From: Ruditapes philippinarum
Taxonomy: Eukaryota
Assembly: GCF_026571515.1 (NCBI RefSeq)
Contig: NW_026864778.1
Span: forward strand, 1-64,000
DNA: 64,000 nt
Direction of reading: 5' to 3'
Part shown: one piece after another, positions 13,419 through 40,705 of the stretch
Numbering within the stretch: the first letter of the stretch is position 1
Layout: each line of letters starts with the position of its first letter
Notes under the pieces: generated by a model
What the model saw: the letters and a program-made list of their open reading frames with translations, nothing else
Database searches by the model: none
Told to the model about the DNA's origin: nothing
Position numbers and translations under genes: made by a program

Positions 13419-13419
13419 T

Positions 13420-13454
<35 letters not shown>

Positions 13455-13457
13455 TTT
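13419..13457. repeat. (TTTA)n microsatellite
   Basis: Seen directly. Confidence 0.95.
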
Positions 13458-14044
13458 GTGTTTTCAAATATCAAAACATGTACAACATATAAATAATATA
13501 CAAAGATAGACAATAAATTATGTAACTATTAAATTTTAAATGTTAGATTCTACTTAAGTCGTGCTAGGGTCAGCGTGGGCGGTAAGAAACTGTTGTTGTA
13601 TTTGTGGTACTTTTAGTCATTTTTGGTTGGCTTTTTTCCTAGTTGAGTGGTTATAATTGCTGTACTGTATAATCACCTTAAGGATATGGTGCCTGCTTTT
13701 TACATTTGTCTTTTGACAGCCTGTCCGTGATATGTTGACTTCAAAACCTCTAACCTCCTTTCAAAACCCCATTTTATTAAGTTTCGCCCATTGTTTTCTC
13801 GTTTAGGGTACAGGCATTCTTTTACTTGGGAACCATAAGCCGCTTTTCATGGAATGGCATTCACGTGTCACATTGAAGGTTCAATATTAAATGCCGTATG
13901 ACATATTCTGATGTTTCAAAATTCAAATTTTTATCATTTCACTTCTGCTTAAGGAGGTTCTATGGGTGTGGACGGTACCTTGCATTTTCAGTACTGTCCA
14001 TGAACAGACTTGATCAAAGCGAGTCTGCAACATTTTCAATTTTA

Positions 14045-14207
14045 NNNNNNNNNNNNNNNNNNNNNNNNNNNNNNNNNNNNNNNNNNNNNNNNNNNNNNNN
14101 NNNNNNNNNNNNNNNNNNNNNNNNNNNNNNNNNNNNNNNNNNNNNNNNNNNNNNNNNNNNNNNNNNNNNNNNNNNNNNNNNNNNNNNNNNNNNNNNNNNN
14201 NNNNNNN
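14045..14207. other. Assembly gap (N run)
   Basis: Ns. Confidence 1.
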
Positions 14208-15439
14208 GATACATGGTAATACTGTAATATATCAACAGTAAAATTATATTGGTTCGATAAACTTATGGTCTATTCTCTGTAAAATGTCTCTGTTATTTAA
14301 ACACTCGTGAATATTGTTTGTAAACAGAATGAAATTTTTCGGAACAAAATATCATTCTGCTATGTTGAGTCGGGTTTTATCCATACGATTTACCATTCGC
14401 TTTTATATAATATTCAAAGAACAATTTTGCAGCATATATATAGCTTTAAACACTTTAAATCTGTTCAGCAATTTTACAAAAGCTAAAACTTATGATATTA
14501 TTACAAAACCGGACTAAGAGTATTGTAAACTTCATTATTTTGGTGAACTCTACGATGTAAAACTTCACATGAAAGTAAATGTCCTTAAACATCAGTACAA
14601 TCATTTTATATTAACTACTGTAACACTGCACTTGCATTTCTGTCTGACATAAATAATCCACTGTATGAGAAATGAAAACCAGTCCTTATTTCCTGACACT
14701 GGAAGCATTTCACAGTACGTACATGAAAACGTTTCCGTCTTGTTTCCTAATGTGCTGCTAGAATGTCATAATCAAACTTAACTCACCGCTATAATAGGAG
14801 CATGTGTTTATGAATGAACAATTGTCATCTGTCAATAGTGGCAAATAAATGTTGCATTACAGCAGTTTTCAATCAGTGGAAATTCATATATTTATTTCAT
14901 AGCTACATTATTGTTGGGATGACCTTCTCAAAAAAGACGCTTTTGATAGCCGTAAAATTCTAAAATTCGTCAGCTTGTGAATTGATGCAGCCTTGGTCTG
15001 GTTTAATGATAATTATCCTCACCAGTTGTATAAACAATGAGGCGCTGAATTCTTAATCTGAAATCATTACCAGAAATCGGTCACTAATGTTTTAGTATGT
15101 AGACAATGGTAAAACTGTATCTTTGTTCGCCACATTTTTCTACTTTTTCTTTCTTTATGATTTCTGTAAAACATTGCAACACAGAAGTTTGATAATACTT
15201 TATATGAAACTTTATACCTCAAACTAACCCTTTGCTGTCATTCTCATGCCATTCCATTTTAGAGATGCATTGATTAGCCTATGTTCATGAACATGATCTT
15301 TTATAATTCTAAATTACAATGTATCTTGCAGTTTGAGATGTAAGCGAGTGTATCATACCGTTGACCAAAGTTAGAGGATATCCCAATGCATTTTCCTATA
15401 GAATATGACAGATGAAAGCTGCATGAGCAAAAATGTAAA

Positions 15440-16127
15440 ATCCTTTTTTGTCAGTCTAGAAACATTAACCTTGACCCAAGTGGCCACTTTAGTCAATAAA
15501 TAAATAGAAGATGTTTTAGCAAAAGTATAAATATATCTTTTTAGATCAGACACCGTTTCTTTTAGTGTCCCCTAACTCAACTCAAATTCCACAAGACAAG
15601 CATTTATATGTTTCATGAAAGGACATAATTCACAAAGCTAAGTTAGTAAGAGTTACGGTTCTTTGACATTACGGCTATAACTGTATTAAGTTTCAATTAA
15701 ATATAATAGATACTTTAAATGTTAAATTATATTTGGATATTTTAAAGTATTACAATGGGAGATAATTCAAATATCAAGCATAGTATAATTATGGTTTTGT
15801 ACATTGCTCTTCATTCTACTGATCTATATCACTGTATAAAGTTTTAATCAAATTTCTACAATATGTTATACAATAGTTATTCTCCGCACAAAGCATTATT
15901 AAGTATTATGGAAAAGAGATAATTAAAACATAAAGTAATGTACATTTATGGTTCTTCACTTCCTCTCACTACAATAACTGTGTTAAGAGGTTTTATGAAG
16001 TTAGTTTTAGTAAAATGACTTTATTTTTTTTCATTATCCGGACAAGACTATGGCGGACGAACGTACTCATGAAAGGACGCACGGACAAGACGGCGACTAT
16101 ATGCTCTCCCTTGGGGGAGCATAAAAA
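15440..16127 (+). mobile_element. Helitron/Helentron-like non-autonomous element (pearl/HINE type)
   Basis: Degenerate internal tandem units (GGGAGATAATTC...TTATGGTT), CGGAC short repeats and a 3' hairpin ATGCTCTCCC-TTG-GGGGAGCAT followed by AAAAA. The 5' boundary is approximate. Confidence 0.6.
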
Positions 16128-17173
16128 TACTCTCTACAATTTTAGCAAGTAAATTATGTTTCGTTTCAAATCCATCGAATCGAAATGAACTTATCCGATA
16201 AATATCGTTATCATTATGATGGTATCTTATTTTGGAACAACTCTGAGATGCAAAAGCCTAAAACTGGGGCACTAAAGATATACAAAAGATTATTGAGAAA
16301 TATACTCAGAAATAAATTGAAGATCGTCTGTGTGTGTTATTCTTAGCCCGAGTCATGTGAAATGCATATGAATTACTTTTCAAGTAAGGGTCACTTTGCA
16401 CATTTAGAAACAACGGAGTTAGAAAATAATCTATAATTTTGGACTTAACTTATGGGTCTTGAACTACTTCAAATTAAGTATTTATTTCGTAGATTTATTT
16501 CCAGACCCGTCATGTCAAAAACAGTGGAGACATTTGAATCCTCTTTTACACGTAGCGAACTCTTGTAATAATAAGTAAAGTGGGGTTAGAACTAACGGAT
16601 GAACATTTAAGTTTTTCTCTTCATCAAAAACAACGTAGTGTTTTAGTCGTAATAAAATGTCTAAAACTTTTTTAAGTAAATTCATGTTTTCTTCCACCTA
16701 GACAGACTCTTGTCTGATGTTTTGACAAGTACCACGCTTTTGACAATATAATCTTCTTAAAATCGCAATATTCATGAAATAAAAATTAGTAATCTGACAC
16801 AGATGCCATGATGTTATCTTTATGTTATAAAATGATATGTCAATTCACCTTATGTTTTGTATATATTGCAATAAAACTGTTGACAACTGACTTGTACAGA
16901 AAATCAGATAATAAATGTATTCCTTAGCAAATATTTGAGTAAGTAAGTAAGTAAGTAAATCTTATGATAGTGATGTACAATATATGAATACCGTATAACA
17001 AATAGCAAGTACAACACCCGGCCACGTTGGGCCTATAATTTACTTCAAGTATATATATATACTTGAAGTGAATTATTTTACATTTGCCCTGATGATCATA
17101 AGAGAAACCGGTTGGCAAATTATTAAATAAGTTAACTCATGGACTGTGTTTTTTGTTTTATTTATATGTGACT

Positions 17174-17232
17174 TTTTTCCGGCACTTGTTTTCATATATA
17201 TATACAAAAAATGAAAACAAGTGCCGGAAAAA
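17174..17232. repeat. Perfect 22-bp inverted repeat (hairpin)
   Basis: TTTTTCCGGCACTTGTTTTCAT, 15-nt spacer, ATGAAAACAAGTGCCGGAAAAA. Confidence 0.9.
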
Positions 17233-18261
17233 TACATGTAGCTTGAAGTGATATATAATTTATTAGCATGATTTATTGATAATTCAATAAGTAAAATGTG
17301 AAGCATATCAGAAATATTATAAATTCATATATTAAAGTATTGTTTATAAAAACAAATTCAAATTTAAACATAAGAAATTGACAATGTAAAAACGTCTAGA
17401 TATTAGTATGTTTATTTATTGATATTTTCAATTTGTAATAACTTCAATTTCTTTACCAATAACTGGCCCTCATTGCATACTTTCAACAAATAACTTTGCA
17501 TCATAAGCAGATTTTGTATCATAAAATCTGTTAGAAAATTTCAGATATATTGTCAAAATCATTGCCATTCTTTCTATAAAGATAATTTTGTTAATGAGGT
17601 GTCCATGTAAATTGTTATACTGTATCAGGAGTATATGAATTCCATCCACTACATCATTGACAGAACAGTCTATATTCATAGACATTTGCAATATAAATCA
17701 ACTTTGATAGGATTGATGCTAGATGAGTGGAATTATATCTCTGACGTCCGTCCATAGTTTGTTATAAATTTTCGTAAAAGAAGCATATGTCTTCTAGCTT
17801 ATTAAAATACACAAATTATATATAATACAATGACTTTTATTGCAAATAAAAAAATATTACAATGTTTATAGCAAAAATATATACATGTATATACATTTAT
17901 GAAAATGAGATCAGAAATTAGAAGCTGTAAAATAATGTGTTCACTGGAATTCAAATTAGAACAATGTTTGCTGCTTTTTGTGATATACAAAATGTAGAAG
18001 CTTCTTCCACCGATAGAAGTAAACGTTTGAGGTAATATAATTTATAAAGTTTCGCTGGCCTGTAAACGTGGCATCCTACTTTCCCAATATTCGGGGTTGT
18101 TTGTTTGTTATGGTTGTTGTTGTTGTTTTTGTGTACAATCCCAATGTGTAGAAGGCTAATAATATATTAAATCTGAGTAGTTTTCATCAGTATTGTTGTC
18201 AGTTCTCTTATAAGTAAGGTTCTTATCCTTCAACCAACTTGGTGATGAATTCGTGTACAGA

Positions 18262-18746
18262 AGATTGTCAACACTTTTATTGCTAAGAATGAAAATGGGA
18301 GGTCAATTGATTTTATTATCAACATAACACTTAAGATAATATCATGACACTTGAATAACAACTGACCATAACAATTAATTGTAATATTCTTAATTACTTT
18401 ATCAGATTTGATATGGATCTGTAATCCCTAGTTACAGATTTAGTGTACCCTTATAAGTGCATAGTAATCTCCCTTTAAATGTAACAAATACTTTTAGTAA
18501 ATAGCTGAAACATAAGTATTATCGTCCCTAAAAGATAATGAATGTATCCACTCTCATAAAATACCAGGTACTATATGGGCCCCTGTATTAAGCATTTAAC
18601 TGTGATGTATTATTGAATGGGTTTAACATTACATTTTCTGTCATTTACGTTCCTTTTAAACGATCTGTTTTGGGAAAAAATCTTGACAACGTGTCTTAAC
18701 AGTGTCATTGTTACTGAAACTTCAACTAGAAAAAACAACGCTTGTT

Positions 18747-18781
<35 letters not shown>

Positions 18782-20768
18782 ACTTAAAGAACCAAAATAA
18801 TTGTTAACTAACAAAAGTTCCATGAGTAAACGAAATAAAACGCGAATAGTTTTCTCAGTCATCTTGTTATTTTGTTGATACTATTTATTCTACACCTAAA
18901 TATATTGTAAACATAATTTACTGAATACATTTCAGGCAAATATAAATTCAAAATTCAACTTTTGTTTTTGTTTTATTCATTACAAACATTTGTGACTTCA
19001 TATCTTCTTTTTTCTAAAATAAAGTTATTATTATTATTGTTTGTATACATATTCACTGTCATTTTGTTTATGTTTCTCTGACGATGTCAAAAATAAAGTT
19101 TCTGTTCTGTTCTGTTCAGTTCTAATATCTGTGAGGTAGCCGTTTTCTACTACATTATGTTATGTGATTCTATGTATGTGTGTATGTATGCATTTATGTA
19201 TGTCGCAAGTTTGCTTATGTTTCCCGCTATTGTGGGACTTTTGCATATATTGAAAATAAAATCTTGAAATCTTGTAAATTTTTCCTATCAGTCAGCCAAG
19301 ACAGAAATAATGGAAGGATATAGCAAACACCTGAAAATCAGATAACATATGAAACAATAACGAATACTTATAAATAAATCTTAACAATTTTACACCACTT
19401 AAGACTGATTGCAATTTAGCACCCTTTACTTCCTTTAATGATGTATAGAAATTAATGGAACGGAACAATATGGAAAATTACAGTTGAATTACAAAGTTAT
19501 GATACGCAATAAAGGACGGTGTTAAATTTCTCACTTAAATTAAGAACCTGTTGACATCTCATAAAGTTTTTTGTTAAATAAACGTTATTGTCCTACAATT
19601 AAAAATCTAATCGGTTTAAATTGGAAGATCTTTTAAAAGAATTTCAATAATGATTGGTAGCAGAAGAAAAAAATATGTCTATCGTCATCACATATGTGTA
19701 CGTCTATCGTCATAACGCATATTCCCGTCTGTCGTCAACATACAAACATATTACAAAAAAAAAGAAAAAAGGAAAGAACAAATAAAAAAGATACGCCGAG
19801 CTTCCTTCTTGAGACAAATAGACCATCAAAACTGCGTATCAGGCGTACATAAAGTTATAATGTCACAATGGAACATTAACTTTCTATAATGTGTGAGCAC
19901 TTTATGACGTTTTGTTATTACAATATGACATGACAACAGGCCATTATACGTATCTTCATCCGCTTTTACGTTATAATATTTGTAGAAGCCATCGTAAATT
20001 CACTAAGTACTGGTAGTGCTAGTGGTACACTAGGCAGAATTCTGTTTCGAAACGGTTTATAACAATCATGTTTGCATTTGTGAACTACAGCCATTGACCA
20101 TACATATTATTATTATTATTATTATCATGTTTTACTAGTCTCTTATAATTCAATGATTGAATGGTCATGTACTATTTTGTGTTTTATTTTTGCTTATGAA
20201 TTTTACTTGTGTATATAGATGAATGAGACTTAAATACATAAAATTATTATAAAATTATATTACATATACTGTAGATATGGAGAAACAATAAATATTATAA
20301 TATAGATAACGCTAACCAACTTGCAAATTTATGGTAGAAGAGAATTCTTTGGTATTAGATTTCTCCCCATGTGTATGCTGGGACTTAAGTTTTATTTATG
20401 CAAATTTTCTGTGTGTTGCCTTGTATGATAATTAGAATTTACATTTATTTACACACTTCCTTTTTGTAAAAGTGTATTTCTGAAATGAAGACTGCACAAT
20501 ATCACATTAAGTCCATGATTGCTCTGGTCGAGGAGTACTTGTTATCACTGGACTATAAGCTCCATCTTTTGACTTGAGATTAAAATTTTACAGTCAGTTT
20601 GACGGATGTTCATACAGATTGTCAACACATTTATTGCTGAAAATGAAAAATGGGAGGTCAATTGACTTTATCATCAACATAACACTTTAGATAATATCAT
20701 GACACTTGAATAACAACTGACCATAACAATTAATTGTAATCTTTTAATTACTTTATCTGATTTTATAT
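18262..20768 (+). repeat. Inverted, permuted duplicate of the region upstream of Hmx
   Basis: 18262-19002 = rc(35138-35828). 19030-19664 = rc(34258-34765). 19675-20608 = rc(39581-40520). 20592-20768 = rc(about 35675-35851). Confidence 0.92.
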
Positions 20769-22114
20769 GAATATTCCTTCCAGCAGTATCGTATGATATT
20801 TCTAATATGTATTATATTTCCAATCTTATTTTTAATTTTTCAACAGTAAATGACCCTAATTCTAAAACAAAAATGTCACAAAGCGTAGCGAAATGATACA
20901 ATTTTTTCACCGTAATTAAGTTTTGAATGAAGAGTCTACTAGTTTACGTAAAAATATGGCCAACGTTTTGCTTTTTGTTCAATCTATACAAAAATTCTTT
21001 ATTACAATTTCGGATTGTAACTTTGCTAGTGTGTCTTTTGATTATTTTTTTTAATATTATTATTTTCCAACGAGTACAATTTTTGACAGTTCTTCGTAAA
21101 ATGATATTACTAGTTTTATTTTTAATTTTTTATAGTAAGTTAACCATTAAAAACCTCTAGTCACAGTTGCAGATAACTTGTATCGTTTTTTTTTAAAATT
21201 GACTGAATGTACATTTTATCAATATATTTATCCTTTTTTTGAATTGATCACGTTCTTCTGTTAAAAATTTCATGCCTGTATTTCTTGCATTGTAAATGGC
21301 TATGTATGTATGTAAACACATATTATGCTATTAAACTATATGTTCTGTTATGTTATGTTATACAATTCGAACTAAGATCAGTTTGCAGTTATGACGGGAC
21401 GATTATAGTTGTCTCCCTTTGATTACTACTTGAAAATCGGAAATTTTCATTTAGGTTAATAGTTATTGAGAGCTCATTTTATCCTAAAAAAATCAGCCGT
21501 CTTAAAAAAGGGATTTGAATTTTTGAAATTATTTTTTTGTCCAATAGGATTGCAGTATTTCAAATGAATCGTAACACATTTGCTTTGGTAAATCGACAAA
21601 CTGTAAATCGACTATTTATAAAAATAATTTAAAGTACGTATTTACAAAACTAAATTGGTCGCGTGGTTGTGCAGCGCCAGACTCTAAGCTATACTTAGCC
21701 TGTATCACTATCACTTAGCTAAAATAAACATTAATTAGTTGATTTATTTTTTAAGATTGATTAAATTTAAAAGAAATATACAATAATATTCGACTATTTC
21801 TGGTTTATTATAAATTCATCTCTCTACTTTCTTTACTGAATTACATCACATTCTATTTTCATATTTATTTTCACATTCAAAACGTAATTATCATAACAGT
21901 TTACAGAAACACAACTGATGCAGACATTTTAATTTAATTGTTCTATAATTAATTTTAATAACAATTTTATACTACTTTAGATAAATTGTAGTTAAGGTTT
22001 TAAGAGGTGGAAATCTGCAAATATGTCATCTATACAGTACATATTTAACATACCAATCATGAATGCATATAATTATTATGACGAGAAAATACAGTTTAAG
22101 TCAATAAAATCTTC

Positions 22115-22391
22115 NNNNNNNNNNNNNNNNNNNNNNNNNNNNNNNNNNNNNNNNNNNNNNNNNNNNNNNNNNNNNNNNNNNNNNNNNNNNNNNNNNNNNN
22201 NNNNNNNNNNNNNNNNNNNNNNNNNNNNNNNNNNNNNNNNNNNNNNNNNNNNNNNNNNNNNNNNNNNNNNNNNNNNNNNNNNNNNNNNNNNNNNNNNNNN
22301 NNNNNNNNNNNNNNNNNNNNNNNNNNNNNNNNNNNNNNNNNNNNNNNNNNNNNNNNNNNNNNNNNNNNNNNNNNNNNNNNNNNNNNNNNNN
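22115..22391. other. Assembly gap (N run)
   Basis: Ns. Confidence 1.
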
Positions 22392-22587
22392 GGTTTCGTG
22401 TTATTTCCGTTTCCCTGCAGAGAGCTAGAATTCCAGGAATCAATTTGTGCGCTCAATGATATCTGATTTGTAATTGTCATATCGATATTGGTATATAAAT
22501 AATGTAAGCTGATGATCTCAGACATGAATTGTTCCTGATGTTAGTAAGATATTCAATGTCACGACAGTAAGATATGTAAATGACTTG

Positions 22588-22790
22588 ATATGAGCCGTGC
22601 CACGACAAAACCAACGTAATGCGTTTGCGACCAGCATGGATCCAGACCAGCCTGCGCATCCGCGCAGTCTGATCGAGATCCATACTTTTCGCTTACAAAC
22701 CCTATATAACAAGTAGAGAAACTGATAGCGAACAGCATGGATCCTGATCAGACTGCGCGGATGTTGGTTTTGTCATGGCGCGGCTCATAT
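22588..22790. mobile_element. MITE
   Basis: TIR ATATGAGCCGTGCCACGACAAAACCAAC / GTTGGTTTTGTCATGGCGCGGCTCATAT, with internal CAGCATGGATCC and CCGCGCAGTCTGATC repeats. Confidence 0.85.
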
Positions 22791-23557
22791 ACCTTTCTGT
22801 CTATATCTAAATACGTTTACAGCTTGTCGACTCATGCATGTGTCTACGCATCTTCTGTCCGTCAAACTTGGGATAAGGACCTCGGACACTCAGCGAAAGA
22901 ATGCGTATTACGGTCTAACCTACGCTAAAAAAAACCCTAAAAATTGTGGAAATTGCATGGAGGTAAATTATCACCACTTTGTTTCAAAATTAATCCTTCA
23001 AGTCATTCAAGGGCATGTCTGGCAACATGTCCGGGGTCCGTATTTGAGGTGCATTTTTTTAATGTGTGCTCTAACGGGCGGATAGAACTCATTAAGCCTG
23101 GAATTCAGTCAGTCTGAGCATTCTTTAATTCTTTCTGATTGTCAGACATAACAATAATAATTTTACAGAAATTGACTTTATTACGTTGGATGTAAAATAA
23201 AAAACATTAGTTACAAATTATACAAATGATATACACTATGTATTGGTTACATCATAAGTATCGTAATTGATAGATTCTTACTCTGACCTTTTATTTGAAT
23301 ATCAATACATTTAACCTGTGCTCTTTTGTGTGGTGAAATTTTTATTGTATCCACTAATCTGATTATTAGAATTAGACAGGCCAGGGATCTATGCATAGAG
23401 CTACTTTCAATAGGTATTTACTCCGAGATTATTAAGAAAAATCGTCGAGGTGTTCCGACTGTATGGTATGACTCACAATTGATTTAATGTCATATCCTCT
23501 CCACCCCTGAAAATATGCAGTTACTGGATTTTTATCAATGGCGTAGCGTCTTAATGT

Positions 23558-27695: not shown

Positions 27696-28967
27696 ATGCT
27701 AAAGGTGACTCAAGTCAAAAGAGAAACTATAAGTCCGAGCAACCAGGAAAACCTGTTTGTTCATCGTTTCCATAGTAATACTGATATGGCTTTACCAAAT
27801 AATGCCCGGATGTCTGCATCAAATATATTTTGGAAGTCACCATATACGGGTGACGGTTTAAGTGGAACCAGTAAATCTGTCTGTATGAAGCCCGTGCTTT
27901 CTATTACGTCACCAAAAGAAAAGATGACAACTTCCGTTGATGATACGTCAAGGTTAACCGTTAAAAGTATATTAAAACATAAGAAAAAATTTGACAACAA
28001 TTTTGATAACATTAAGTCTGAGAACAAAGCTGATCATGAACCGCAACCGAATTTGATTACGACTGGCACGGGTAAAGGAAAACCGCACGGATCTCCTGTG
28101 AGGGCAAAAACGTGTAGAAAACGTGTGCAGTTTAATGAAATATCAAATCAGAACAGTGCAGAATTGAAACGTGGGTCTTTAAATTTGTATTCTCCCACAG
28201 CGCATGCACCGGGAAGAAGATTATTTTTAGACAGGCAAACATCTACGCGAATTTTAGGCACACCAAATCGTTTAGGGAATCGCTGGTCAGTTAACAGTCA
28301 AAACAATAGAAACGACGTTGCTTCACTTAATAACGGTGAAGCCCATATAAAGTATCAAATTAATGCATTTATTAGAAAGCTTAGATTAGCTGAGAATGAA
28401 AAACATACAAAAATGGAGTCTGAGACAAAGTCTAACGTGTTAGATCAAAACGCGCAAAATAAAACTGCTGCAAAACTTAGAAAATCTAGATCATTTTCTG
28501 GAACTACGTCACGACCAGACTGGACAGAATACGACATGGATAAAATAAATTTGAGTGCTAACCAATCAAATGATGAGGCAGACTCGTGCCATATTAATGA
28601 AGCAGAAACGGTTCCTTCAGTTGTCTACGATGCGAAAAGCAGAAGTTTTTCTTCGGGATCTGTGTCAATAGAAAGCTTTAGCTCCGACAATGAGGATCAG
28701 ATAGTTGAACGAACACCAGGGGGCGCGAAAGTATTTCGACCAAAGCCTAATGCTTCTTTGTATACGAAATACAGACATATAACTACCAACGAACATGTAA
28801 ATAAGTATGGATGTACACCAAGACCGAAAAGTGAAAATGACACGAAACGAAAAGAGCCAGTAAACTTTTGTGATAAACGTAAAACCAGTCAAATTTTATG
28901 CTGGTTAGAGGAAGTAAGATTTGCACAGAAAAATCAAGTACCATCAGTTTCACCGACAGAAGTTTAA
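27696..28967 (+). CDS. Uncharacterised 423-aa, probably disordered protein with SILK and RVxF (PP1-docking-like) motifs
   Basis: 1272-nt uninterrupted ORF in AT-rich DNA. A strong splice acceptor lies just upstream (T-tract + CTAG, 27636-27648) and a candidate upstream donor G|GTAAGT at about 26954. KSILK at aa 90-94 and RKRVQF at aa 141-146. Confidence 0.75.
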   Translation: MLKVTQVKRETISPSNQENLFVHRFHSNTDMALPNNARMSASNIFWKSPYTGDGLSGTSKSVCMKPVLSITSPKEKMTTSVDDTSRLTVKSILKHKKKFDNNFDNIKSENKADHEPQPNLITTGTGKGKPHGSPVRAKTCRKRVQFNEISNQNSAELKRGSLNLYSPTAHAPGRRLFLDRQTSTRILGTPNRLGNRWSVNSQNNRNDVASLNNGEAHIKYQINAFIRKLRLAENEKHTKMESETKSNVLDQNAQNKTAAKLRKSRSFSGTTSRPDWTEYDMDKINLSANQSNDEADSCHINEAETVPSVVYDAKSRSFSSGSVSIESFSSDNEDQIVERTPGGAKVFRPKPNASLYTKYRHITTNEHVNKYGCTPRPKSENDTKRKEPVNFCDKRKTSQILCWLEEVRFAQKNQVPSVSPTEV

Positions 28968-29897: not shown

Positions 29898-30619
29898 TTA
29901 TTTTGGTGGTAAAAATGAAGGTCGAAGTCTCGAATCTTGTGCGTAAGGATGAGAGTAATATGCCGGGGCAGTAAAACCTCCGCGCAATAATTCGTCTCTA
30001 GCATTGACCACGTGACTAAATGAACTAAAAGATGGCGGTTGTGCATATGGCGTCTGCTGTAAATATCCTGCTGCAAATGCTGGTGGTAGTGGAATTTCGT
30101 CCATTTCTCCGTTGATTTGTCGCTTCCATTTATTTCTCCTATTCTGAAACCAAATTTTTATTTGTGTTTCGGACAAATTTAAACTGGCAGCAAGTCCTGA
30201 CCTTTCTGCACTTGAGAGATAGCGTTTCATATCGAATGCTGATTCTAGTTGGTAAACCTGACTCCTCGAAAACACGGTCCTTGTCTTCTTTTTCTTCGCC
30301 TTGAAAGGACTTGGTGACTGCTGATAGCTTTCTCCTAAAGAGTCTAAACTTTTATCACTTGATTGATTCAGCAGATGAGCAGTTGGTCTTATTGATGAGT
30401 TCGTGTTTACTTCAGACGGGCTCAGTCGGTCTTCTTGTGAAAGAATTACATTGCTTGCCCTTGGAAAATTGAAATAAGGATATGCATTATGAGTAATTTC
30501 AGGGCTGAATGATTCCTCGCGAGTGTGCAGGTGTCTGTAAGGTGCATGAAACACTGTTGGCGTTGGGGATGGGTACTCATTTTCAGGTGTACTGCAAGCT
30601 CTAGGTTGTACGTTCGATT
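29898..30619 (-). CDS. Hmx: Hmx/NK5 homeobox gene, exon 2 (homeodomain at about 30114-30293)
   Basis: [59 protein letters not shown] is diagnostic of the HMX/NK5 family. Acceptor TTTCTTTTCCAG ends at 30620 and the frame is open from 30619 to the stop. Confidence 0.95.
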
Positions 30620-31301
30620 CTGGAAAAGAAATTAATTAAAAATATTAATCATATTAATATTCCAATTAGACACTAAAAAAATTAATTAACGTTCAATTGA
30701 TAAACATTTCTTTCGTAAAAGATATTGTGTGACTTGTAAGAAACGGGCATTTTAATATTGTGGAAAACTTATAACTTTTTTTCAAATAAAGCAAAAATAT
30801 AAAAACAAGTGTAATGCGTTTTCCTTTTTAAGCACCAGAGATCTACATTAGAACTGCTAAACGACTTCTAAAGTTTTATTGCAAATGAGAAGAAAATAAT
30901 TTATTGTTTCTTAAATGAAAATTATGTAGAATCAAAAGAAATGTAAAACATAATGTATATATAATCGGTAGACTGACTTATATATTTTCAATTATTTTAA
31001 CTGATAAAAAAAGAGAATGTTTTATTAATGCGCAACACGTTGCGGGTAAATTTGTGTTCGATACTCAATTATACAGCAGTTAATGCCAAATAAAAATATG
31101 TTTATAATTTGCTATTTATATGCACACGTAAAATCTTTAAGAATATCGAATGTTAAAGCTGTTAAAGTTTCAAAATATTTATAAGAAGTGAATAATGAAT
31201 TTTAACATAAAAATGAAGTATTGTAAATTGACATGATCAAAACTCATAAAAAACTTGAATTATTTTTTAAAAATTTTTTTATTTTAAAATTTAAACTTTT
31301 C

Positions 31302-31551
31302 CAAAAAAGTTGGAGTTAGTGTTTCCATCAATATCCGGTGCATAATGATGAACTGTTGACAGGTGCATTCTGGGAACTCTTGGCACTTCATCGCGTACTG
31401 TATCACGTGATTTTTTGCCGTCTGTATCTCCGAGAATTCTGTTGATGGAGAAGCTGAGGGGTTTCTTCTCCTGTAAAGATGGCCCCTTATCGTTCGCTTG
31501 TGATTTCATGTCCATCACTTTTTCACTCGAAGATTTTACTTCCTCAATCAT
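31302..31551 (-). CDS. Hmx: Hmx/NK5 homeobox gene, exon 1 (eh1/TN Groucho-binding motif)
   Basis: MIEEVK...KKPLSFSINRILG; FSIxxIL is the eh1 motif of NK-class proteins. The 3' boundary is uncertain because the donor is non-canonical (see findings). Confidence 0.8.
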
Positions 31552-34208: not shown

Positions 34209-34257
34209 ACCAGAAATCAAGGATATAAGACACCAATATAACATTTTACATATTTTT

Positions 34258-35851
34258 TCTGCTACCAATCATTATTGAAATTCTTTTAAAAGAACTTCCA
34301 ATTTTAACCGATTAAATTTTTAATTGTAGGACAATAACGTTTATTTAACAAAAAACTTTATAAGATGTCAACAGGTTCTTAATTTAAGTGAGAACTTTAA
34401 CACCGTCCTTTCTTGCTATCATAACTTTGTAATTCAACTGTAATTTTCCATATTGTTCCGTTCGATTAATTTCTATACATCATTAAAGGAAGTAAAGGGT
34501 GCCAAATTGCAATCAGTCTTAAGTGGTGTAAAATTGTTTAGATTTATTTATAAGTGTTCGTCATTGTTTCATATGTTATCTGATTTTCAGGTGTTTGCTA
34601 TATCCTTCCATTATTTCAATCTTGGCTAACAGATAGGAAAAAAAATAATCTACTTCATTGATATTAGAACTGAACAGAACAGATACTTTATTTTTGGCAT
34701 TTACAAGTATACATCGTCATACAAATATAGACAAAATGACAGTGAATATATAAGTAAATCATAATAACATATATGTGTATATAATAAACGTTGATTGATA
34801 TTTAATGAACGTATTCAAATGTAACAATTCTTACGTTATTCCATAATTCTATGATAATTAGCTTTAAAATAATACATAATATATAATTATATTTGCAGTC
34901 AAACTTGATTATAAAAGACAATTTTGAAGCAATACAAAGAAAAATCTTTAATATATTGAAGGAACATTTATAAAATTGTAACTTGTTCTGTCAGACCATT
35001 TTAATACAAAGGGGGTCGTTACTGACAAGTTCTAATGTGTAGAAAGTCCAATCTAACATTTCCCTTTACCGTACATATTTAATACACTATTAAAACGAGA
35101 TTTGTGATTTGATTAAGAACAGAAATGTATCTTTCATTATGAAGTCTCAAATGTTTATAATGAATGAAAAAATAAAAGAAGAAAGTTGAATTTATATTTA
35201 TTCAGTATTTTATGTGTACAATGTATGAAGGTGTAACATGTACAGTATCAACAAAAGAAAAACATGATGGCACTTTTCTTAGTAAAGAATTACTTTGGTT
35301 CTTTAAGTGCTGCAAAATCAAAATTACAAAAATCAATAACAGAAAAACAAGTGTTGTTTTTCTGGTTGAAGTTTCAGAAACAATGACAAAGTTAAGGCAT
35401 GTCCCAAAAAAAAAAACAGACCGTTTAAATGGAACGCAACGGACAGAAAATGTAATGTTAAACCCATTCAATAATACATCACAGTTAAATGCTTAATACA
35501 GGGGCACATATAGTACCTGGTATTTTATGAGAATGGAATTACATTCATTATATTTTAGGGATGATAATATTTTTGTTTAAGCTTTTTACTAAAAGGATTT
35601 GTTACATTTAAAGGGGGAGATTACTATGCATTTATAAGGGTACACTAAATCTGTAACTAGGGATTACAGATCCATATCAAATCTGATAAAGTAATTAAGA
35701 ATATTACAATTAATTGTTATGGTCAGTTGTTATTCAAGTGTCATGATATTATCTAAAGTGTTATGTTGTTGATAAAGTCAATTGACCTCCCATTTTTCTT
35801 TCTTAGCAATAAAAGTGTTGACAATCTGTAAGAACATCCGTCAAACTGACT
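34258..35851 (-). repeat. Hmx-upstream blocks I and II, duplicated in inverted form at 18262-19664 and partly at 20592-20768
   Basis: Long near-identical reverse-complement matches, e.g. CACCACTTAAGACTGATTGCAATTT and GATAATATCATGACACTTGAATAACAACTGACC. Confidence 0.9.
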
Positions 35852-38800
35852 ACAGAAAGTATCTGCTACCATGGGAAAAAAGTAAGCCACTATGAGAACC
35901 TTCCTAGCTTTGGACCAAAGTTTGGTTGTCGCCTGTCTTGTAAAAAAAATAAATCATTGTGATAATATTACACTTTCTCTTTCAATTCCAGTTTGCTTCA
36001 GTTTGCCCCTTTTACAATGAAAACAGGAGAAAATATATTCCAAAATTTTATAATTTTAATCCAAGTACATGTATGTTTAAATTTAAAGTACTGAGAATCC
36101 AAAGAGTATGTAAATTATAATGTAATACATCTAATGTTATGATGATGAACTGTTCGCTAAAATCTTAAAATCAACTTCTGTTCTCTTCTGAAATAACATT
36201 AAACCTCTTCCAGAAGCTTGTACCGAGAAAACTGCAAAATTAATTCTTCAGAAATAGGAATATTCATTTAAGCACTTTCAGAACGAATTCTTATCAATAC
36301 AACTAAATCTGCGGCCCATATTTTCCACTTTCATTTATTTACATCTCGAATCTAAACTAAACTTATAGCTTCTTTTGGTGATCTGATTTTACTATTTCAC
36401 CATTGCGAAATATTTGAAGTGAGTTGATCTTTGAAGGTTTTGGTTTATCTTTATTTTATTTATTCATATTTCTACTCCGCATAAGATTAAAGCTGATTAA
36501 AGTACTGGCTAATAATGCTTATTAGAGGTACCGAAAGTAGTTACGATGACCACTATATCTGCAGCACGTTGGTTATAGACAAATACATGTACAAATATTT
36601 AATATATATAAACTTTCTGCTTCAGCAACAAGTACCGATTATCTACGATTTTGTAAAAGCGATAGTTTTTAGAAAGTTTTGGCTATATTTGTAATGTAAA
36701 TTCTATATATGGAATATATATGATATTAAATCCCTTTTTTTTAAGTTTATAATAATGTATTATCATACATGTGTCGTACGTTTTGTCAAGATACAGCCTG
36801 CTATCACTACATGTTAGAGAGGGATTTTATTCAAGAAGCATAACTATATAGAAAGTTTAAGAACTTTAGCATTTTTAGATTATCAGGTTTTTACAGATAA
36901 CGGTTCCAGCTATTCGATTCTCTATTGACCATACGTACGTGTAACGTATTTTGCCGGTTTTGACATTCTTTAAAACAAAACTTACTACAACAGTCGTATA
37001 CATGTATATAAATGTTTCATATGATGTTGAAAATCATTTTATCGAGATTGAAAAACCTACACTCTAGCCCACTATCGCTAATTGATGGTGTCATTCTATT
37101 TCACCACTGACGGAAATGTACAATTTATAAAACAAAATGTTAATAAACACAACAAACAGAAAATTCGACATATAGTGTCATATAATCGGGACTAAAACCT
37201 TAAATGCAATGTGTATTTTAATTCTAGTGTACGTGTTTAAATACGGAATAACAGAAAAGACGCGGAAACATTACCCCTTACAAAATCAAATTTTATAAAT
37301 TTCTTTTTATTTATGAACAACGGCGCTTCTTTCTGTTGTCAAAGCATTATTAAAGTTCTTAATTTATTTTATAGTCTTATTCAATTATCTATTCATTTGA
37401 CTTGAATGTCACTAGAATTTGCTGTTAACTTTACATGTACACGCAAAGTATGAAAATAAATAAATATTGCCATACAGAATTATTATATTGATCTTATATC
37501 AGCCTCTTGTCTGTTAGACGCTCGTTTAACTTAGTTGTGTCGTTTACCATTCCTTGAGGTCATTTGTCAACAACTTTATTTCTATGTATGAAAAATGGGA
37601 GGGGAGTTTGTCTTATCATTTTATAGCACGAGGATAAAATCATGACACGATGGTCAGATTATTTGAACATTAACTAATTTTTATTTCATAAATATTGAGA
37701 TTTTTGTTGATTAAATCAGTAGGGCCGTGATACTTGTCATGAAACGAGTCAATATGTCTGGGTTGCAGAAAATATCCTGAGATAATCTATTAACCTTCTT
37801 CTTAAAATAATCATTTAATCGAAAGCATATATGATAGAATACGTATCTATCTAAAATAAAAAGTATTGAGATAATTTACTATGATAAACACTCGTTTATC
37901 ATAAAGCACACATTTAAAGCTGCACTTTCAAGGTTAGAAAGATTACATTTTCAACCTTATACTAAGTGAAAATTTGCCATTTGCACATGGCGAATTTATT
38001 CTATGTCTATGATTTATCATGTGTATACTAAAAGTCTATATAAAATATATGAAACAAGAAATGGGGATGGATATAACACGTGACCAACATTGTAAAAAAA
38101 ACTAATGTCCAAGTCATTTCATTTGTTCAATACTTCATAAAATAATGCTGAGAATTTCTTGGCCACTGGGACGCAAAAAGCACTTTGTTTAAATATCTTT
38201 ATTGTTTACAATATCTTTACTGTAAACGCATACAGTAAGTGAGATATTTCACAAGAGTTATGGTATCTTTAAGTGTTATAATTCCCACCTTTGGTTATGG
38301 TTTAATTTACAATATTGTCTGGACTGATTAACAATTTCCACTTCTTTAAAGGAAATTCAATTAACTTTAACTACAATAAATATTAAGTGATTGGAAATTG
38401 TTATATATTATTTTTGCAATTATCACTTTTTATTTTATCTGATCAAATCAATTGTTTCTCTTTCCGTCAAGTTTTTTTTTCAGGGGTATGAGAATTTCAA
38501 ATATATAATGTCCTGCTCTGTTGGTACGTCTCTTAAAACGATTTTGTACTATTTGATAAAAGAAATATATAAAAGATATTACAGGTGTTTTCTTTAAAAA
38601 ATAACAACATTTAAATCGCGTTGTGTATTGGTTTAGAAATATAACATTTTCATTAGTGTCTTAAATACATATACATTGTACTCATAACCTTTTAACTGTA
38701 TTCTAATTAACATATGTTTACGCACAGAATGTCTAGAGTTGGTGGGGTATACAACGAAACTTGTCTTTGTCTATAGTTCATATGTTTTACTTTTTGTTAC

Positions 38801-39580
38801 AAAAGAGTCTGTTAATATACGGAATGTATTATCAAGTTATGTTTGTAGGATATAAATATTCATGCCGCAGATGCGTTAGATATGTTAAACACTCTTTGAA
38901 ACTGTTTATGATAGAAGAGATTACAATACAGTGAATACTTGATTTTTATTTAAACATTATAACCTCCTTCAAAGCCAAGACGACAATATGGAAATTGTAA
39001 CAATTGCCAGAGGTTGGGGTTACAAAATATAAAATTTGTCGATTTTTTTCATTTTTGTATAGATCTAAATCATAACATTGAAGAGATAAAATTAAGTTAC
39101 ATTTTCATCACAATGAGCGGGACTTATAAATGATTATCGGTTGTCATTTTTTTTTACTTAATTGTGATTTATGAACATATAATAAATGGAAAGGATAAAA
39201 AACACTGAATGTATATGACAAAGCATCTGTTTAATACGGGTAATCTATTATGTAACAAGTTTACTTTATTTCCCGTTTAATACGGGTAATCGCTATGTAA
39301 CACGTTTACTTTATTGCCCGTAGAATACGGGTAATCGCATTAACAAGTTTACTTCATTGCCCGTAGAATACGGGTAATCGCTATGTAACAAGTATATTTC
39401 ACTGCCCGTTTAATACGGGTAATCACTATGTAACACGTTTACTTTATTGCCGGTAGAATACGGGTAATCGTTATGTTACAAGTTTACTTTATTGCCCGTT
39501 TAATACGGGTTACAAGTTTTCTATTTATGTGATGACTGGCATCATAGATACAGGCAGGAAATATTCTTTTGTATACAAAT
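35852..39580. other. 3.7-kb segment bounded by 17-bp direct repeats and absent from the paralogous copy
   Basis: CATCCGTCAAACTGACT at 35835-35851 and 39581-39597. The paralog has one copy with both flanks joined (rc of about 20583-20625). Confidence 0.8.
39229..39519. repeat. Minisatellite, about 45-bp unit, 6-7 copies, palindromic core
   Basis: AATACGGG recurs at 39233, 39279, 39324, 39367, 39412, 39457 and 39502. The core is TTGCCCGT-N5-ACGGGTAA. Confidence 0.92.
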
Positions 39581-40520
39581 CATCCGTCAAACTGACTGTA
39601 AAATTTTAATCTTAAGTCAAAAGATGGAGTTTATCGTCCAGTGATAACATGTACTCCTCGACCAGAGCAATCATGGACTTAATATGATATTGTGCATTCT
39701 TCATTTCAGAATACACAAAGTACGAGTGTAAATAAATGTAAATTCTAATTATCATACAAGGCAACACACAGAAAATTTGCATAAATAACCTAAATCAATA
39801 TATCATTTTTATAAATAAACACACATGAGCACAAAGTATGAACCAATAAAGGCTTCGCATAAACTTGGTTTAATTAAAGTCCCAGCATACACATGAGGAA
39901 AAATCTAATACCATGTCCAAATCCATAAGCATAACTTTGCAAGTTGGTTAGCGTCATTTATTGTTTCGCAATATCTATATGTAATATAATTCTATGATAA
40001 TTTTATGTATTTAAGTCTCATTCATATATATACACAAGTAAAATTCATAAGCAAAAATGAAACACAAAATAGTACATGACCATTCAATTAGTGAATTATA
40101 AGAGACTATTAAAACATAATAATGGTAATAATATGTATGGTCAATGGCCGTAGTTCACAAATGCAAACATAATTGTTATAAATCGTTTCGAAACAGAATT
40201 CTGCCTGGTATACCACTAGCACTACCAGTAATTATCAATCATTGATCACGATGGCTACTACAATTATTATATCGTAAAAGCGGATGAAGATACGTATAAT
40301 GACCCGTTGTCATGTCATATTGTAATAACAAAACGTCATAAAGAGCTCACATTATAGAAATGTGACATTATAACTTTATGTACGTCTGATACGCAGTTCT
40401 GATGGTCTATTTGTCTCAAGAAGGAAGCTCGGCATATCTTTTATATTTGTTCTTTCCTGTTTGTTTGTATGTTGACGAAAGACGGAAATATGCGTTATGA
40501 CGATAGACGTTCATATATGT
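39581..40520 (-). repeat. Hmx-upstream block III, duplicated in inverted form at 19675-20608
   Basis: E.g. GCCGAGCTTCCTTCTTGAGACAAATAGACCATC and CAGAATTCTGTTTCGAAACG are shared in reverse complement. Confidence 0.9.
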
Positions 40521-40705
40521 AATGACGTGCGGTAGACGTACATATATGCGATGACGATAGACGTTCATATATGTGATGATGACAGACATGGATATATGTG
40601 AAGAAGATGGAAATAGACACGTGTGATGACGATAGACGTACGTATTTGTGATGATGAAAGAAGATGACGATAGAAGAATATATATATGTGTGTGATGACG
40701 AAAGA
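40495..40705. repeat. Degenerate simple tandem repeat (GATGACGATAGACGTWCATATATGT-like)
   Basis: Seen directly; a shorter inverted counterpart lies at about 19675-19740. Confidence 0.75.

What the first reader, a model, noticed from the sequence alone, without database searches (positions are those of the whole stretch)
18262..20768. Inverted, circularly permuted and terminally redundant copy of the Hmx upstream region
Seen: reading toward Hmx, the upstream blocks run III (40520-39581), I (35851-35138), II (34765-34258). The inverted copy on the other side of the gene reads I, II, III, then the first ~150 bp of I again (18262-18415 repeated at 20617-20768), with a novel II-to-III junction at about 19665-19675. 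Inference: permutation plus terminal redundancy is what a circular intermediate (eccDNA or rolling-circle copy) would leave after reinsertion. The copy lies upstream of, and in the same orientation relative to, the plus-strand orphan gene (27696) as the original does to Hmx. It could give that gene Hmx-like regulation or act as a 3' shadow enhancer for Hmx.
Basis: partly seen in the sequence, partly recalled or inferred. Interest (0 to 1): 0.8.

Follow-up and report, generated by a model that had tools for sequence, protein, structure and literature searches.

The report
Rearranged duplicate of Hmx upstream DNA
A 2.5-kb stretch of non-coding DNA from upstream of a clam's Hmx homeobox gene has been copied once, flipped and with its pieces re-ordered, to the other side of the gene; the structure is real and is not a transposon, but the sequence cannot show that a DNA circle made it and nothing yet shows that it does anything.

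Summary
Window 18262-20772 is an inverted, locus-specific copy of three blocks that lie 2.7-9 kb upstream of Hmx. Its order is I-II|III-I', and the first ~160-180 bp of block I occur at both ends.

- **Not a transposon.** Blocks I, II and III occur nowhere else in the 1.4-Gb assembly. Only the embedded SINE-like repeats are multi-copy.
- **Present in other animals.** Contigs from four public runs of four studies lie along the copy. Contigs from three of those runs bridge, or nearly bridge, its junctions. One embedded SINE is absent in one run.
- **One new junction.** The donor carries a single-copy 3.73-kb segment flanked by a perfect 17-bp direct repeat. The copy has the uninterrupted site. 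So III-I was contiguous, and only II|III is novel; it sits in a 25-bp minisatellite with at most 4 bp of microhomology.

The circle reading is allowed but not needed. Permutation with an overlap is also what a transient tandem duplicate, a backward template switch, or two overlapping fragments captured at one break would leave. The published screen for circle-mediated duplications treats flanking overlap as its false-positive pattern.

The "orphan" gene is not an orphan. It is a bivalve gene with relatives in five named heterodont genera, and those relatives lie on the same chromosome-scale records as Hmx. No enhancer evidence was found or could be obtained. Two assembly gaps bracket the contig that holds the copy, so its placement and orientation are unverified. 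Interest is modest.

The parts
18256..19002 (+). Copy, block I. Homology starts at TACAG (18256), which corresponds to donor 35830.
   Evidence: the 5' part is 94.9% identical
19003..19030 (+). 28 bp in the copy that stand where the donor has about 340 bp of unique DNA (35137-34768).
   Evidence: alignment; one search shows the donor-only DNA is single-copy, so this reads as a deletion or skip in the copy
19031..19139 (+). Copy, I-II linker, 73% identical to donor 34767-34650.
19141..19278 (+). SINE-like high-copy repeat inserted in the copy only. It is polymorphic.
   Evidence: every one of the 37 scored matches on other contigs (342 first-look candidates, 40 scored) is to this repeat, at 91-97%; an X4 contig joins 19140 to 19279
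19279..19677 (+). Copy, block II.
   Evidence: 96.2% identical to donor 34642-34249
19670..19683 (+). The novel head-to-tail II|III junction (19677/19678). Microhomology is at most 4 bp.
   Evidence: sequences; X1 contig 19629-19824 bridges it with 0 differences
19678..20608 (+). Copy, block III. It begins with about 2 units of the donor's 25-bp minisatellite and contains a SINE-like repeat (20104-20251) shared with the donor.
20592..20608 (+). Single 17-mer AGTCAGTTTGACGGATG. This is the uninterrupted III-I site.
20609..20772 (+). Copy, block I'. This is the terminal redundancy, a second copy of the start of block I.
   Evidence: X4 contig 20711-21155 bridges I' into the right flank
34248..35834 (-). 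Donor blocks I and II, 2.7-4.3 kb upstream of the Hmx ATG.
35835..35851 (-). Donor 17-bp direct repeat, the copy proximal to Hmx.
35852..39580 (.). 3.73-kb donor-only segment. It is single-copy in the genome, has no ORF of 70 aa or more, and holds a 45-bp x 6.3 tandem array at 39229-39510.
39581..39597 (-). Donor 17-bp direct repeat, the copy distal to Hmx.
39581..40527 (-). Donor block III.
40473..40661 (.). 25-bp minisatellite (7.4 units). It runs past the edge of homology, and the copy's II|III breakpoint falls inside it.
29898..31551 (-). Hmx gene. Exon 1 runs from the ATG near 31551 to about 31300. Exon 2 (30554-29898) carries the homeodomain.
   Evidence: PF00046, 2e-22; 63% and 82% identity to the Mercenaria Hmx-family protein, each exon compared separately
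27696..28967 (+). Single-exon 423-aa gene, tail to tail with Hmx.
14045..14207 (.). Assembly gap to the left of the contig that holds the copy.
22115..22391 (.). Assembly gap between the copy and the two genes.

Best explanation
This is a genuine one-off segmental duplication, not a mobile element. About 2.2 kb of non-coding DNA from 2.7-9 kb upstream of Hmx was copied at the DNA level. It was inserted in inverted orientation about 9 kb beyond the 3' end of Hmx, which is 6.9 kb upstream of the neighbouring conserved gene.

The insert consists of two overlapping donor stretches joined head to tail:
- I-II (donor 35830 to 34248).
- III-17mer-I' (donor 40527 to 39581, then 35851 to 35670).

I take the most likely origin to be one complex, replication- or repair-coupled event of the MMBIR/FoSTeS or multi-fragment templated-insertion type. 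The copying ran through I-II, jumped about 6 kb back to the minisatellite at the start of III, ran on through the III-I boundary for about 180 bp, and then left the donor. A free circle is not required.

The upstream locus is probably the donor. After the event the copy gained a still-polymorphic SINE. It also lost, or never copied, about 340 bp and 83 bp. The 3.73-kb donor-only segment either arrived later in the donor or was skipped at its 17-bp repeats.

The pair now forms a 91-96% identical inverted repeat around a 13.5-kb interval that holds Hmx and its neighbour. No function is shown, and neutral persistence is the default.

Shown: the structure, the copy number, the junction sequences, and presence in several animals. 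Inferred: the mechanism, the polarity and the neutrality.
For: **Structure and significance.**

**Copy number.** Searches of the whole 1.4-Gb assembly with the SINE-free parts scored every candidate and found only this contig. One search scored 3 of 3, one search scored 4 of 4, and one search scored 40 of 45.

**Junctions.**
- The copy has the uninterrupted 17-mer site, so only II|III is novel.
- II|III lies in a minisatellite with at most 4 bp of microhomology and no long homology.

**One event.** In the three-way comparison of I, I' and donor I, I and I' share 2 states against the donor. The private changes number about 5, 9 and 2. That fits one event.

**Polarity.**
- The donor minisatellite extends about 130 bp beyond the homology edge.
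- The donor-only 340 bp is unique DNA, so a deletion in the copy is simpler than an insertion of unique DNA.

**Independent reads.**
- The X1 contig 19629-19824 bridges II|III.
- The X4 contig 20711-21155 bridges I' and the right flank.
- The X4 contig 17886-18288 reaches 27-33 nt into block I.
- An X4 contig lacks the SINE.
- All four runs cover 29-30 of 30 bins.

**Literature.** Permuted duplicates with microhomology are described, and MMBIR/FoSTeS is discussed for them (PMC7450558).
Against: The sequence alone cannot separate template switching from a circle or a transient tandem duplicate. All three give the same product.

Other weaknesses:
- The pre-insertion target site is unknown, so microhomology at the two outer junctions cannot be scored.
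- The II|III junction is bridged only by run X1, which may be the animal that was assembled.
- No bridging contig from another sample was listed.
- Placement and orientation of the 7.9-kb contig rest on scaffolding across two N gaps.
- The left end of the copy lies 21 bp from the edge of the 3.73-kb donor-only segment. That is roughly a 2% coincidence, and this explanation does not account for it.
- Neutrality is assumed, not tested.
Confidence: 0.55

Rival explanations
1. Circular intermediate. The donor segment III-I-II was excised or copied as a circle closed at II|III. The circle was then copied for about 1.07 turns, by rolling-circle or break-induced synthesis on the circle, and the product was inserted downstream of Hmx.
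For: - The order is permuted, with a single novel head-to-tail junction and at most 4 bp of microhomology.
- The recipient site is not in tandem with the donor.
- The copy starts within 21 bp of the III-I boundary and runs past it again. That looks like initiation and read-through at one site.
- There are precedents in cattle and humans (PMC7450558; PMC7188851; the Durkin 2012 reference is listed).
Against: - A cut-and-reinsert circle gives no terminal redundancy, so an extra rolling-circle step must be added.
- Chicote et al. argue that their own cases are single reintegrations and not rolling circles.
- Takahashi & Innan exclude patterns with flanking duplicates or overlap as possible false positives.
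- There is no direct evidence of a circle.
Confidence: 0.25
2. Transient tandem duplicate. The donor, or a first simple copy, became (III-I-II)x2. Then either a piece spanning the junction (I-II-III-I') was copied, or the array was trimmed by deletions. The tandem state was later lost.
For: - I-II|III-I' is exactly a sub-segment of such an array.
- It matches the false-positive scheme in Fig. 4A of PMC7188851.
- Tandem duplicates collapse easily.
- In three runs block II appears as a single contig at about 3 times the depth of the flanking contigs. That could hint at copy-number variation, although the tool warns against reading depth this way.
Against: - It needs three or four events.
- No remnant of a second unit is found next to either locus.
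- I'-to-flank and flank-to-I junctions are seen directly in run X4.
Confidence: 0.15
3. Assembly or scaffolding artefact: a haplotig, a collapsed repeat, or a misplaced or mis-oriented contig between two gaps.
For: - The copy sits in a 7.9-kb contig bounded by N runs at 14045-14207 and 22115-22391.
- The assembly is gapped and has 15,874 contigs.
- The genome is highly polymorphic (table 3).
Against: - The flanks of the copy match nothing near Hmx or elsewhere, so it is not a haplotig.
- I, I' and donor I are three distinct sequences.
- Junction-bridging contigs exist in public runs, two of them from a sample other than X1.
- Only the placement and orientation of the contig remain open.
Confidence: 0.05
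4. Mobile element or RNA-mediated copy. The candidates are a small LTR/TRIM-like element with I and I' as terminal repeats, a Helitron-like rolling-circle element, a retrocopy of a circular RNA, or a chimeric retrocopy made when reverse transcriptase switched between two overlapping transcripts.
For: - The copy has terminal direct repeats of about 160 bp.
- The order is permuted, as in circRNA-derived pseudogenes.
- SINE families are active in this genome, which implies active reverse transcriptase.
Against: - There are no further copies in 1.4 Gb.
- There are no ORFs, tRNA genes or Rfam matches.
- The repeats do not have TG...CA ends, and the copy has no target-site duplication and no poly-A at either end.
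- The donor bases at the II and III edges are not a canonical donor/acceptor pair. Every candidate start of III is preceded by AC or AT, not AG.
Confidence: 0.03

Closest known systems
Permuted segmental duplications attributed to circular DNA intermediates: the cattle colour-sidedness KIT translocations (Durkin et al. 2012), human cSDPs (Chicote et al. 2020, PMC7450558) and human eccDNA-mediated duplications (Takahashi & Innan 2020, PMC7188851)
   Same: - The donor and the copy hold the same blocks in swapped order and the same relative orientation.
- There is one novel head-to-tail junction.
- There is only microhomology and short indels at the breakpoints.
- The copy is not in tandem with the donor.
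- The copy is present in several individuals.
   Different: - It is 100 to 100,000 times smaller (2.5 kb against tens of kb to about 500 kb).
- It lies on the same contig, only 13.5 kb from the donor, and is inverted.
- The two swapped blocks overlap by about 160-180 bp in donor coordinates. The published screens treat that as an exclusion pattern, and a simple reinserted circle does not produce it.
- No outgroup is available to fix donor and recipient.
Complex replicative rearrangements (FoSTeS/MMBIR) and multi-fragment templated insertions at double-strand breaks
   Same: - Several joins lie within a few kb of each other.
- Microhomology is at most 4 bp.
- One breakpoint is in a minisatellite and another next to a short palindrome (CTGTAA...TTACAG at donor 35669-35651).
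- The orientation is inverted.
- Small filler or deletion scars lie inside the copy (19003-19030, 20387-20391).
   Different: - These events are usually seen as new human copy-number variants or in tumours and yeast, not as an old polymorphism or fixed variant next to a developmental gene in a clam.
- A replicative origin cannot be shown from the sequence.
Terminal-repeat retrotransposons in miniature (TRIM) and other small non-autonomous LTR elements
   Same: A unit of about 2.5 kb with direct terminal repeats of about 160 bp and no coding capacity.
   Different: - It is single-locus.
- It has no target-site duplication.
- It has no TG...CA termini.
- The 'internal' part and the 'LTR' are simply contiguous donor DNA in another phase.

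Membership tests
Circular-intermediate (eccDNA-mediated) insertional duplication | The same blocks appear in swapped order (A-B becomes B-A) with unchanged relative orientation. | tested here: met
   The donor reads III-I-II and the copy reads I-II-III, all blocks inverted together.
Circular-intermediate (eccDNA-mediated) insertional duplication | The swapped blocks abut exactly in donor coordinates, with no gap, no overlap and no second flanking copy (the dot-plot criterion of Takahashi & Innan). | tested here: not met
   Blocks I and I' both map to donor 35830-35670, an overlap of about 160-180 bp.
Circular-intermediate (eccDNA-mediated) insertional duplication | The fusion junction shows only microhomology or short indels, with no long homology. 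| tested here: met
   The II|III junction at 19677/19678 has at most 4 bp (ATGT) and lies inside a 25-bp minisatellite.
Circular-intermediate (eccDNA-mediated) insertional duplication | The breakpoints are present in independent individuals, so the structure is not an assembly error. | tested here: inconclusive
   The right end is bridged in X4 (62 nt inside the copy). The left end is nearly bridged in X4 (27-33 nt inside the copy). II|III is bridged only in X1, which may be the assembled animal. III-I' is reached by 20 nt in X7. All.
Circular-intermediate (eccDNA-mediated) insertional duplication | An outgroup shows the donor as ancestral and the recipient site as empty. | not testable with these tools
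The polarity rests only on the minisatellite and on the donor-only unique DNA.
Circular-intermediate (eccDNA-mediated) insertional duplication | The circle itself is detected. | not testable with these tools
   This needs circle-enriched sequencing or outward-facing PCR.
Transposable element (LTR/TRIM, Helitron, other) | Multiple dispersed copies in the genome. | tested here: not met
   Matches occur only on contig C13265. Searches scored every candidate, and one search scored 40 of 45.
Transposable element (LTR/TRIM, Helitron, other) | A target-site duplication and characteristic termini. | tested here: not met
   No direct repeat flanks 18256 and 20772, the termini are not TG...CA, and no terminal inverted repeats were seen.
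Transposable element (LTR/TRIM, Helitron, other) | Coding capacity or an RNA-gene-derived head. | tested here: not met
   No ORF of 70 aa or more beyond two overlapping ORFs of about 90 aa in block I, which have no support. No Rfam match and no tRNA gene.
MMBIR/FoSTeS-type complex rearrangement | Two or more template switches between nearby sites, with microhomology at the joins. | tested here: inconclusive
   One internal join has at most 4 bp of microhomology. The outer joins cannot be scored without the empty site. The apparent extended similarity at the left end is not significant (p = 0.39).
circRNA-derived or chimeric retrocopy | The junction corresponds to canonical splice sites in the donor, and the insert carries retroposition marks (poly-A, target-site duplication). 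| tested here: not met
   The donor bases before every candidate start of III are AC or AT, not AG. There is no poly-A and no target-site duplication.
Shadow or duplicated enhancer of Hmx | Regulatory activity, or at least cross-species conservation or open chromatin. | not testable with these tools
   No outgroup DNA, ATAC data or RNA data were laid on the region. CAAGTG and TAAT-type motifs are not enriched. The copy has taken a SINE and several deletions.

The most novel reading that the evidence does not exclude
A small circle carrying Hmx upstream regulatory DNA was formed, copied for slightly more than one turn, and reinserted. The 17-mer at the III-I boundary would be a preferred nick or break site, used both to start that copying and as the entry point of the 3.73-kb donor-only segment. 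The reinserted block now supplies Hmx-type regulatory input to the conserved neighbouring gene, which may be a PP1-binding protein, or acts as a distal Hmx enhancer. That would be a natural example of enhancer duplication through eccDNA in a mollusc.
Probability: 0.08. Interest if true: 0.65.

Novelty: new member of a known kind. Interest (0 to 1): 0.3.

Why it matters
If the mechanism could be pinned down, this would be a compact case of a permuted, redundant insertional duplication outside mammals and yeast, resolved to the base pair. It would be useful for judging how often circles, rather than template switching, build small duplications.

It also sets a 91-96% identical inverted repeat around a developmental homeobox gene and its conserved neighbour. 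That arrangement could support inversion or gene conversion, and it offers a natural duplicate of upstream DNA for reporter tests.

As it stands it is a well-documented structural variant with no demonstrated function.

Tried and rejected
- **Dispersed transposon.** Rejected by exhaustive genome searches.
- **Haplotig or alternative allele of the Hmx upstream region.** Rejected. The flanks 14208-18255 and 20773-22114 match nothing near Hmx, and their unique parts match no other contig.
- **'Empty allele' joints 18130->21224 and 18132->21035.** Rejected. Position 18095-18132 is a GTT-rich simple repeat. The 31 intervening letters resemble the start of the SINE at about 21190. So these contigs come from other SINE copies.
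- **The 3.73-kb donor-only segment as an ordinary high-copy element.** Not supported. It is single-copy apart from a 110-bp repeat.
- **The donor-only 340 bp as a transposon insertion.** Rejected. It is unique DNA.
- **Homology extending left of 18256 into the 17-mer.** Not significant.
- **An older, larger inverted duplication, suggested by 16684-16891 matching 37559-37775 at 69%.** Probably an old low-copy repeat, since a third partial copy lies at 42547-42622.
- **Back-splice origin.** No canonical splice sites.
- **Homeodomain-type motif enrichment.** None.
- **Metagenome scan with a 24-mer across II|III.** It hit only an unrelated contig of 47% GC.
- **Contig depth.** Not used as copy number, following the tool's own warning.
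- **Hmx exons.** They were searched and compared separately.
Full report
**1. The observation**

On the plus strand, 18262-20772 matches three blocks that lie upstream of a minus-strand homeobox gene, all in inverted orientation:

| Part of the copy | Copy coordinates | Donor coordinates | Identity |
|---|---|---|---|
| Block I | 18262-19002 | 35827-35138 | 94.9% in the 5' part |
| I-II linker | 19031-19139 | 34767-34650 | 73% |
| Block II | 19279-19678 | 34642-34248 | 95% |
| Block III | 19683-20608 | 40527-39581 | 91-95% |
| Block I' | 20592-20772 | 35851-35670 | 94% |

Inside the copy, 18262-18418 recurs at 20616-20772 at 92.4% identity. E-values run from 1e-16 to 0.

Per-block substitution identity is 91-96%, and pooled K2P is 0.064. 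The range runs from 0.039 for block II to 0.093 for the first part of block III.

The gene is an Hmx-family gene:
- Exon 2 (29898-30554, minus strand) carries a homeodomain (PF00046, 2e-22).
- Exon 2 is 82% identical to a Mercenaria mercenaria Hmx-family protein.
- Exon 1 (ATG near 31551) is 63% identical to the same protein.

The best named relatives place the window in a venerid clam. I did not verify that beyond the Mercenaria similarity.

**2.

*The III-I boundary.* Reading towards Hmx, the donor is III, a 17-mer, 3.73 kb, the same 17-mer, then I and II. The 17-mer AGTCAGTTTGACGGATG stands at 39581-39597 and again at 35835-35851. The copy has it once, at 20592-20608, with III and I' running straight through it. 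So the III-I' join in the copy is the uninterrupted state of the donor. The only junction without a counterpart in the donor is II|III at 19677/19678.

*The II|III junction.* It falls inside a 25-bp minisatellite. The donor has 7.4 units of it (40473-40661), running about 130 bp past the edge of homology. The copy keeps about two units. Microhomology there is at most 4 bp.

*The 3.73-kb donor-only segment.* It is single-copy in the assembly apart from a 110-bp repeat. It has no ORF of 70 aa or more.

*Other differences between the copy and the donor:*
- The copy carries a 138-bp SINE-like insertion at 19141-19278. Every scored match on another contig in the whole-copy search was to this repeat, at 91-97%.
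- The donor has about 340 bp that the copy lacks, replaced in the copy by 28 bp at 19003-19030. This DNA is unique in the genome.
- The donor has a further 83 bp that the copy lacks.
- A second SINE-like repeat (20104-20251, matching 39976-40133) is in both, so it predates the event.

*The ends of the copy.* Homology starts at TACAG (18256, matching 35830), which is 4 bp past the 17-mer. Similarity further left is not significant (p = 0.39). The right end (20772, matching 35670) abuts a short palindrome in the donor, CTGTAATCCCTAGTTACAG. No target-site duplication, poly-A tract or TG...CA ends are present.

**3. Is it a repeat family?**

No. The window's genome has 1.408 Gb in 15,874 contigs, and the window is C13265:1-64000. 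Searches with the SINE-free parts returned only this contig:
- 3 of 3 candidates scored.
- 4 of 4 candidates scored.
- 40 of 45 candidates scored; all matches elsewhere were to a simple-repeat tail.

There are also no Rfam matches and no tRNA genes.

**4. Is it an artefact?**

The copy lies in a 7.9-kb contig between N runs at 14045-14207 and 22115-22391. Its position and orientation relative to Hmx therefore depend on scaffolding, which I could not check.

The internal structure is better supported.
- The flanks match nothing near Hmx.
- Apart from short multi-copy repeats, the flanks match no other contig. So the contig is not a haplotig.
- I, I' and donor I are three distinct sequences.

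Twenty of the 24 listed public runs, from 8 studies, hold part of the stretch. I laid Logan contigs from four runs of four studies:

| Junction or feature | Contig | Result |
|---|---|---|
| II\|III | X1, 19629-19824 | Bridges it with no differences |
| I' to right flank | X4, 20711-21155 | Bridges it (62 and 383 nt either side) |
| Left flank to I | X4, 17886-18288 | Reaches 27-33 nt into block I; carries a 3-bp deletion at 18259 that makes it read like the donor |
| III into I' | X7, 20420-20628 | Runs 20 nt into I' |
| SINE at 19141-19278 | X4 | Joins 19140 to 19279, so the SINE is polymorphic |

X1 may be the assembled animal, so II|III lacks a listed bridge from another sample.

Joints at 18130-18132 that seemed to skip the whole copy come from a GTT-rich simple repeat next to other SINE copies. 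They are not an empty allele.

**5. Mechanism**

The product is two overlapping donor stretches joined head to tail and inserted, inverted, about 13.5 kb from the donor. Four routes give exactly this sequence:
1. One replicative or repair event with a backward template switch, or capture of two overlapping fragments at one break.
2. A circle closed at II|III and copied for about 1.07 turns.
3. A transient tandem duplicate from which a piece spanning the junction was copied.
4. A first simple copy that was tandemly duplicated and then trimmed.

The literature is clear that permutation alone suggests a circle (PMC7450558). It is equally clear that a block flanked by two copies of the other, or any overlap between the swapped blocks, is the pattern produced by tandem duplication with deletion or by two insertions. 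The published human screen excludes such cases (PMC7188851). A plain reinserted circle gives no redundancy.

I therefore rank a single template-switching or fragment-capture event first (0.55), a rolling circle second (0.25) and a tandem intermediate third (0.15).

Evidence that I and I' derive from one event: they share two states against donor I. The private changes number about 5, 9 and 2 in 157 bp, which does not differ significantly from a three-way split.

The upstream locus is the probable donor, for two reasons:
- The donor minisatellite extends beyond the copied part.
- The donor-only 340-bp and 83-bp stretches are unique DNA.

RNA-mediated routes are unlikely. The donor bases at the junction are not splice sites, and retroposition marks are absent.

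**6. Unexplained points**

- The copy begins 21 bp from the edge of the 3.73-kb donor-only segment. The chance that a random breakpoint falls that close to a given site in a unit of about 2.2 kb is near 2%. A break-prone site at the 17-mer would explain both events, but that is speculation.
- The origin of the 3.73-kb segment is open. It could be an insertion with a 17-bp target duplication, integration of a circle at the 17-mer, or older DNA skipped between the two 17-mers.
- In X4, X7 and X10 block II appears as one contig at about 2.6-3.4 times the depth of the neighbouring contigs. It carries a haplotype found at neither locus of the assembly. This could mean identical block II at both loci (gene conversion) or a third copy. 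The tool warns that contig depth is not copy number.
- Divergence is uneven among the blocks.

**7. The functional claims**

Each of the two tail-to-tail genes has the unit upstream in the same relative orientation. The copy ends 6.9 kb before the ATG of the neighbouring gene, and the donor ends 2.7 kb before the ATG of Hmx.

The 423-aa ORF at 27696-28967 is not an orphan:
- It is single-copy here.
- It has full-length relatives in Mercenaria (70%), Mactra (51%), Mya (47%) and Dreissena (43%).
- In Mercenaria, Mactra, Mya and Dreissena those relatives lie on the same chromosome-scale records as the Hmx hits.
- In Dreissena the locus tag is two numbers from two Hmx paralogues.

Nothing supports or excludes enhancer activity. 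CAAGTG and TAAT-type motifs are at background density. The copy has tolerated a SINE and several deletions.

**8. Verdict**

This is a real, well-defined, single-locus permuted duplication of Hmx upstream DNA. It is a new member of the known class of complex or permuted insertional duplications. The circular-intermediate reading is possible but not favoured by its own section's criteria. The regulatory reading is untested. The 'orphan' label is wrong. Interest is modest, at 0.3.

Noticed in passing
It is predicted to be disordered. An alignment of 9 relatives shows an invariant S-I-L-K (residues 91-94) and K-R-V-x-F (residues 142-146). From my own knowledge, that is the SILK plus RVxF docking-motif pair of protein phosphatase 1 partners. 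Other invariant motifs are ITTGTG..HG, GRRLxLD..S.RILG and NFCD..KT.QI..WL. The gene lies tail to tail with Hmx here, and its relatives lie on the same chromosome-scale records as Hmx in four other bivalves.
   Followed up: partly
window 35852-39580: A 3.73-kb single-copy, ORF-free segment is flanked by a perfect 17-bp direct repeat. It is absent from the duplicated copy. It contains a 45-bp x 6.3 tandem array at 39229-39510. Its origin is unresolved.
   Followed up: partly
window 19141-19278; 20104-20251; 21124-21362; 17800-17918: Four short high-copy SINE- or MITE-like repeats, 82-97% identical to their genomic copies. The one at 19141-19278 is absent in run X4, so the family has been active recently.
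   Followed up: partly
window 2725-5264, 6135-7529, 8373-10032, 13003-15359: A set of older repeated segments, 70-87% identical, in the first 15 kb of the window. They were not examined.
   Followed up: no
window 16684-16891, 37559-37775, 42547-42622: A low-copy element of about 210 bp, 69-71% identical between copies. Only the first two were found in the whole-genome search. The pair lies in the same order relative to block I in both loci, which is probably coincidence.
   Followed up: partly
window 19279-19568, as seen in runs X4, X7, X10: Block II appears as a single contig at roughly three times the depth of the neighbouring contigs. It carries a haplotype (19359G, 19361G, 19362A) found at neither locus of the assembly. 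This may reflect gene conversion between the inverted copies or an unassembled third copy. The depth caveat applies.
   Followed up: no
window 22477-22683 (-) and 22737-22928 (+): Two short ORFs on opposite strands share a ...DQTARM... motif directly after the N gap. This looks like an inverted pair of some repeat.
   Followed up: no
window 50518-51140: A tandem array of units of about 164 bp, 93-95% identical.
   Followed up: no
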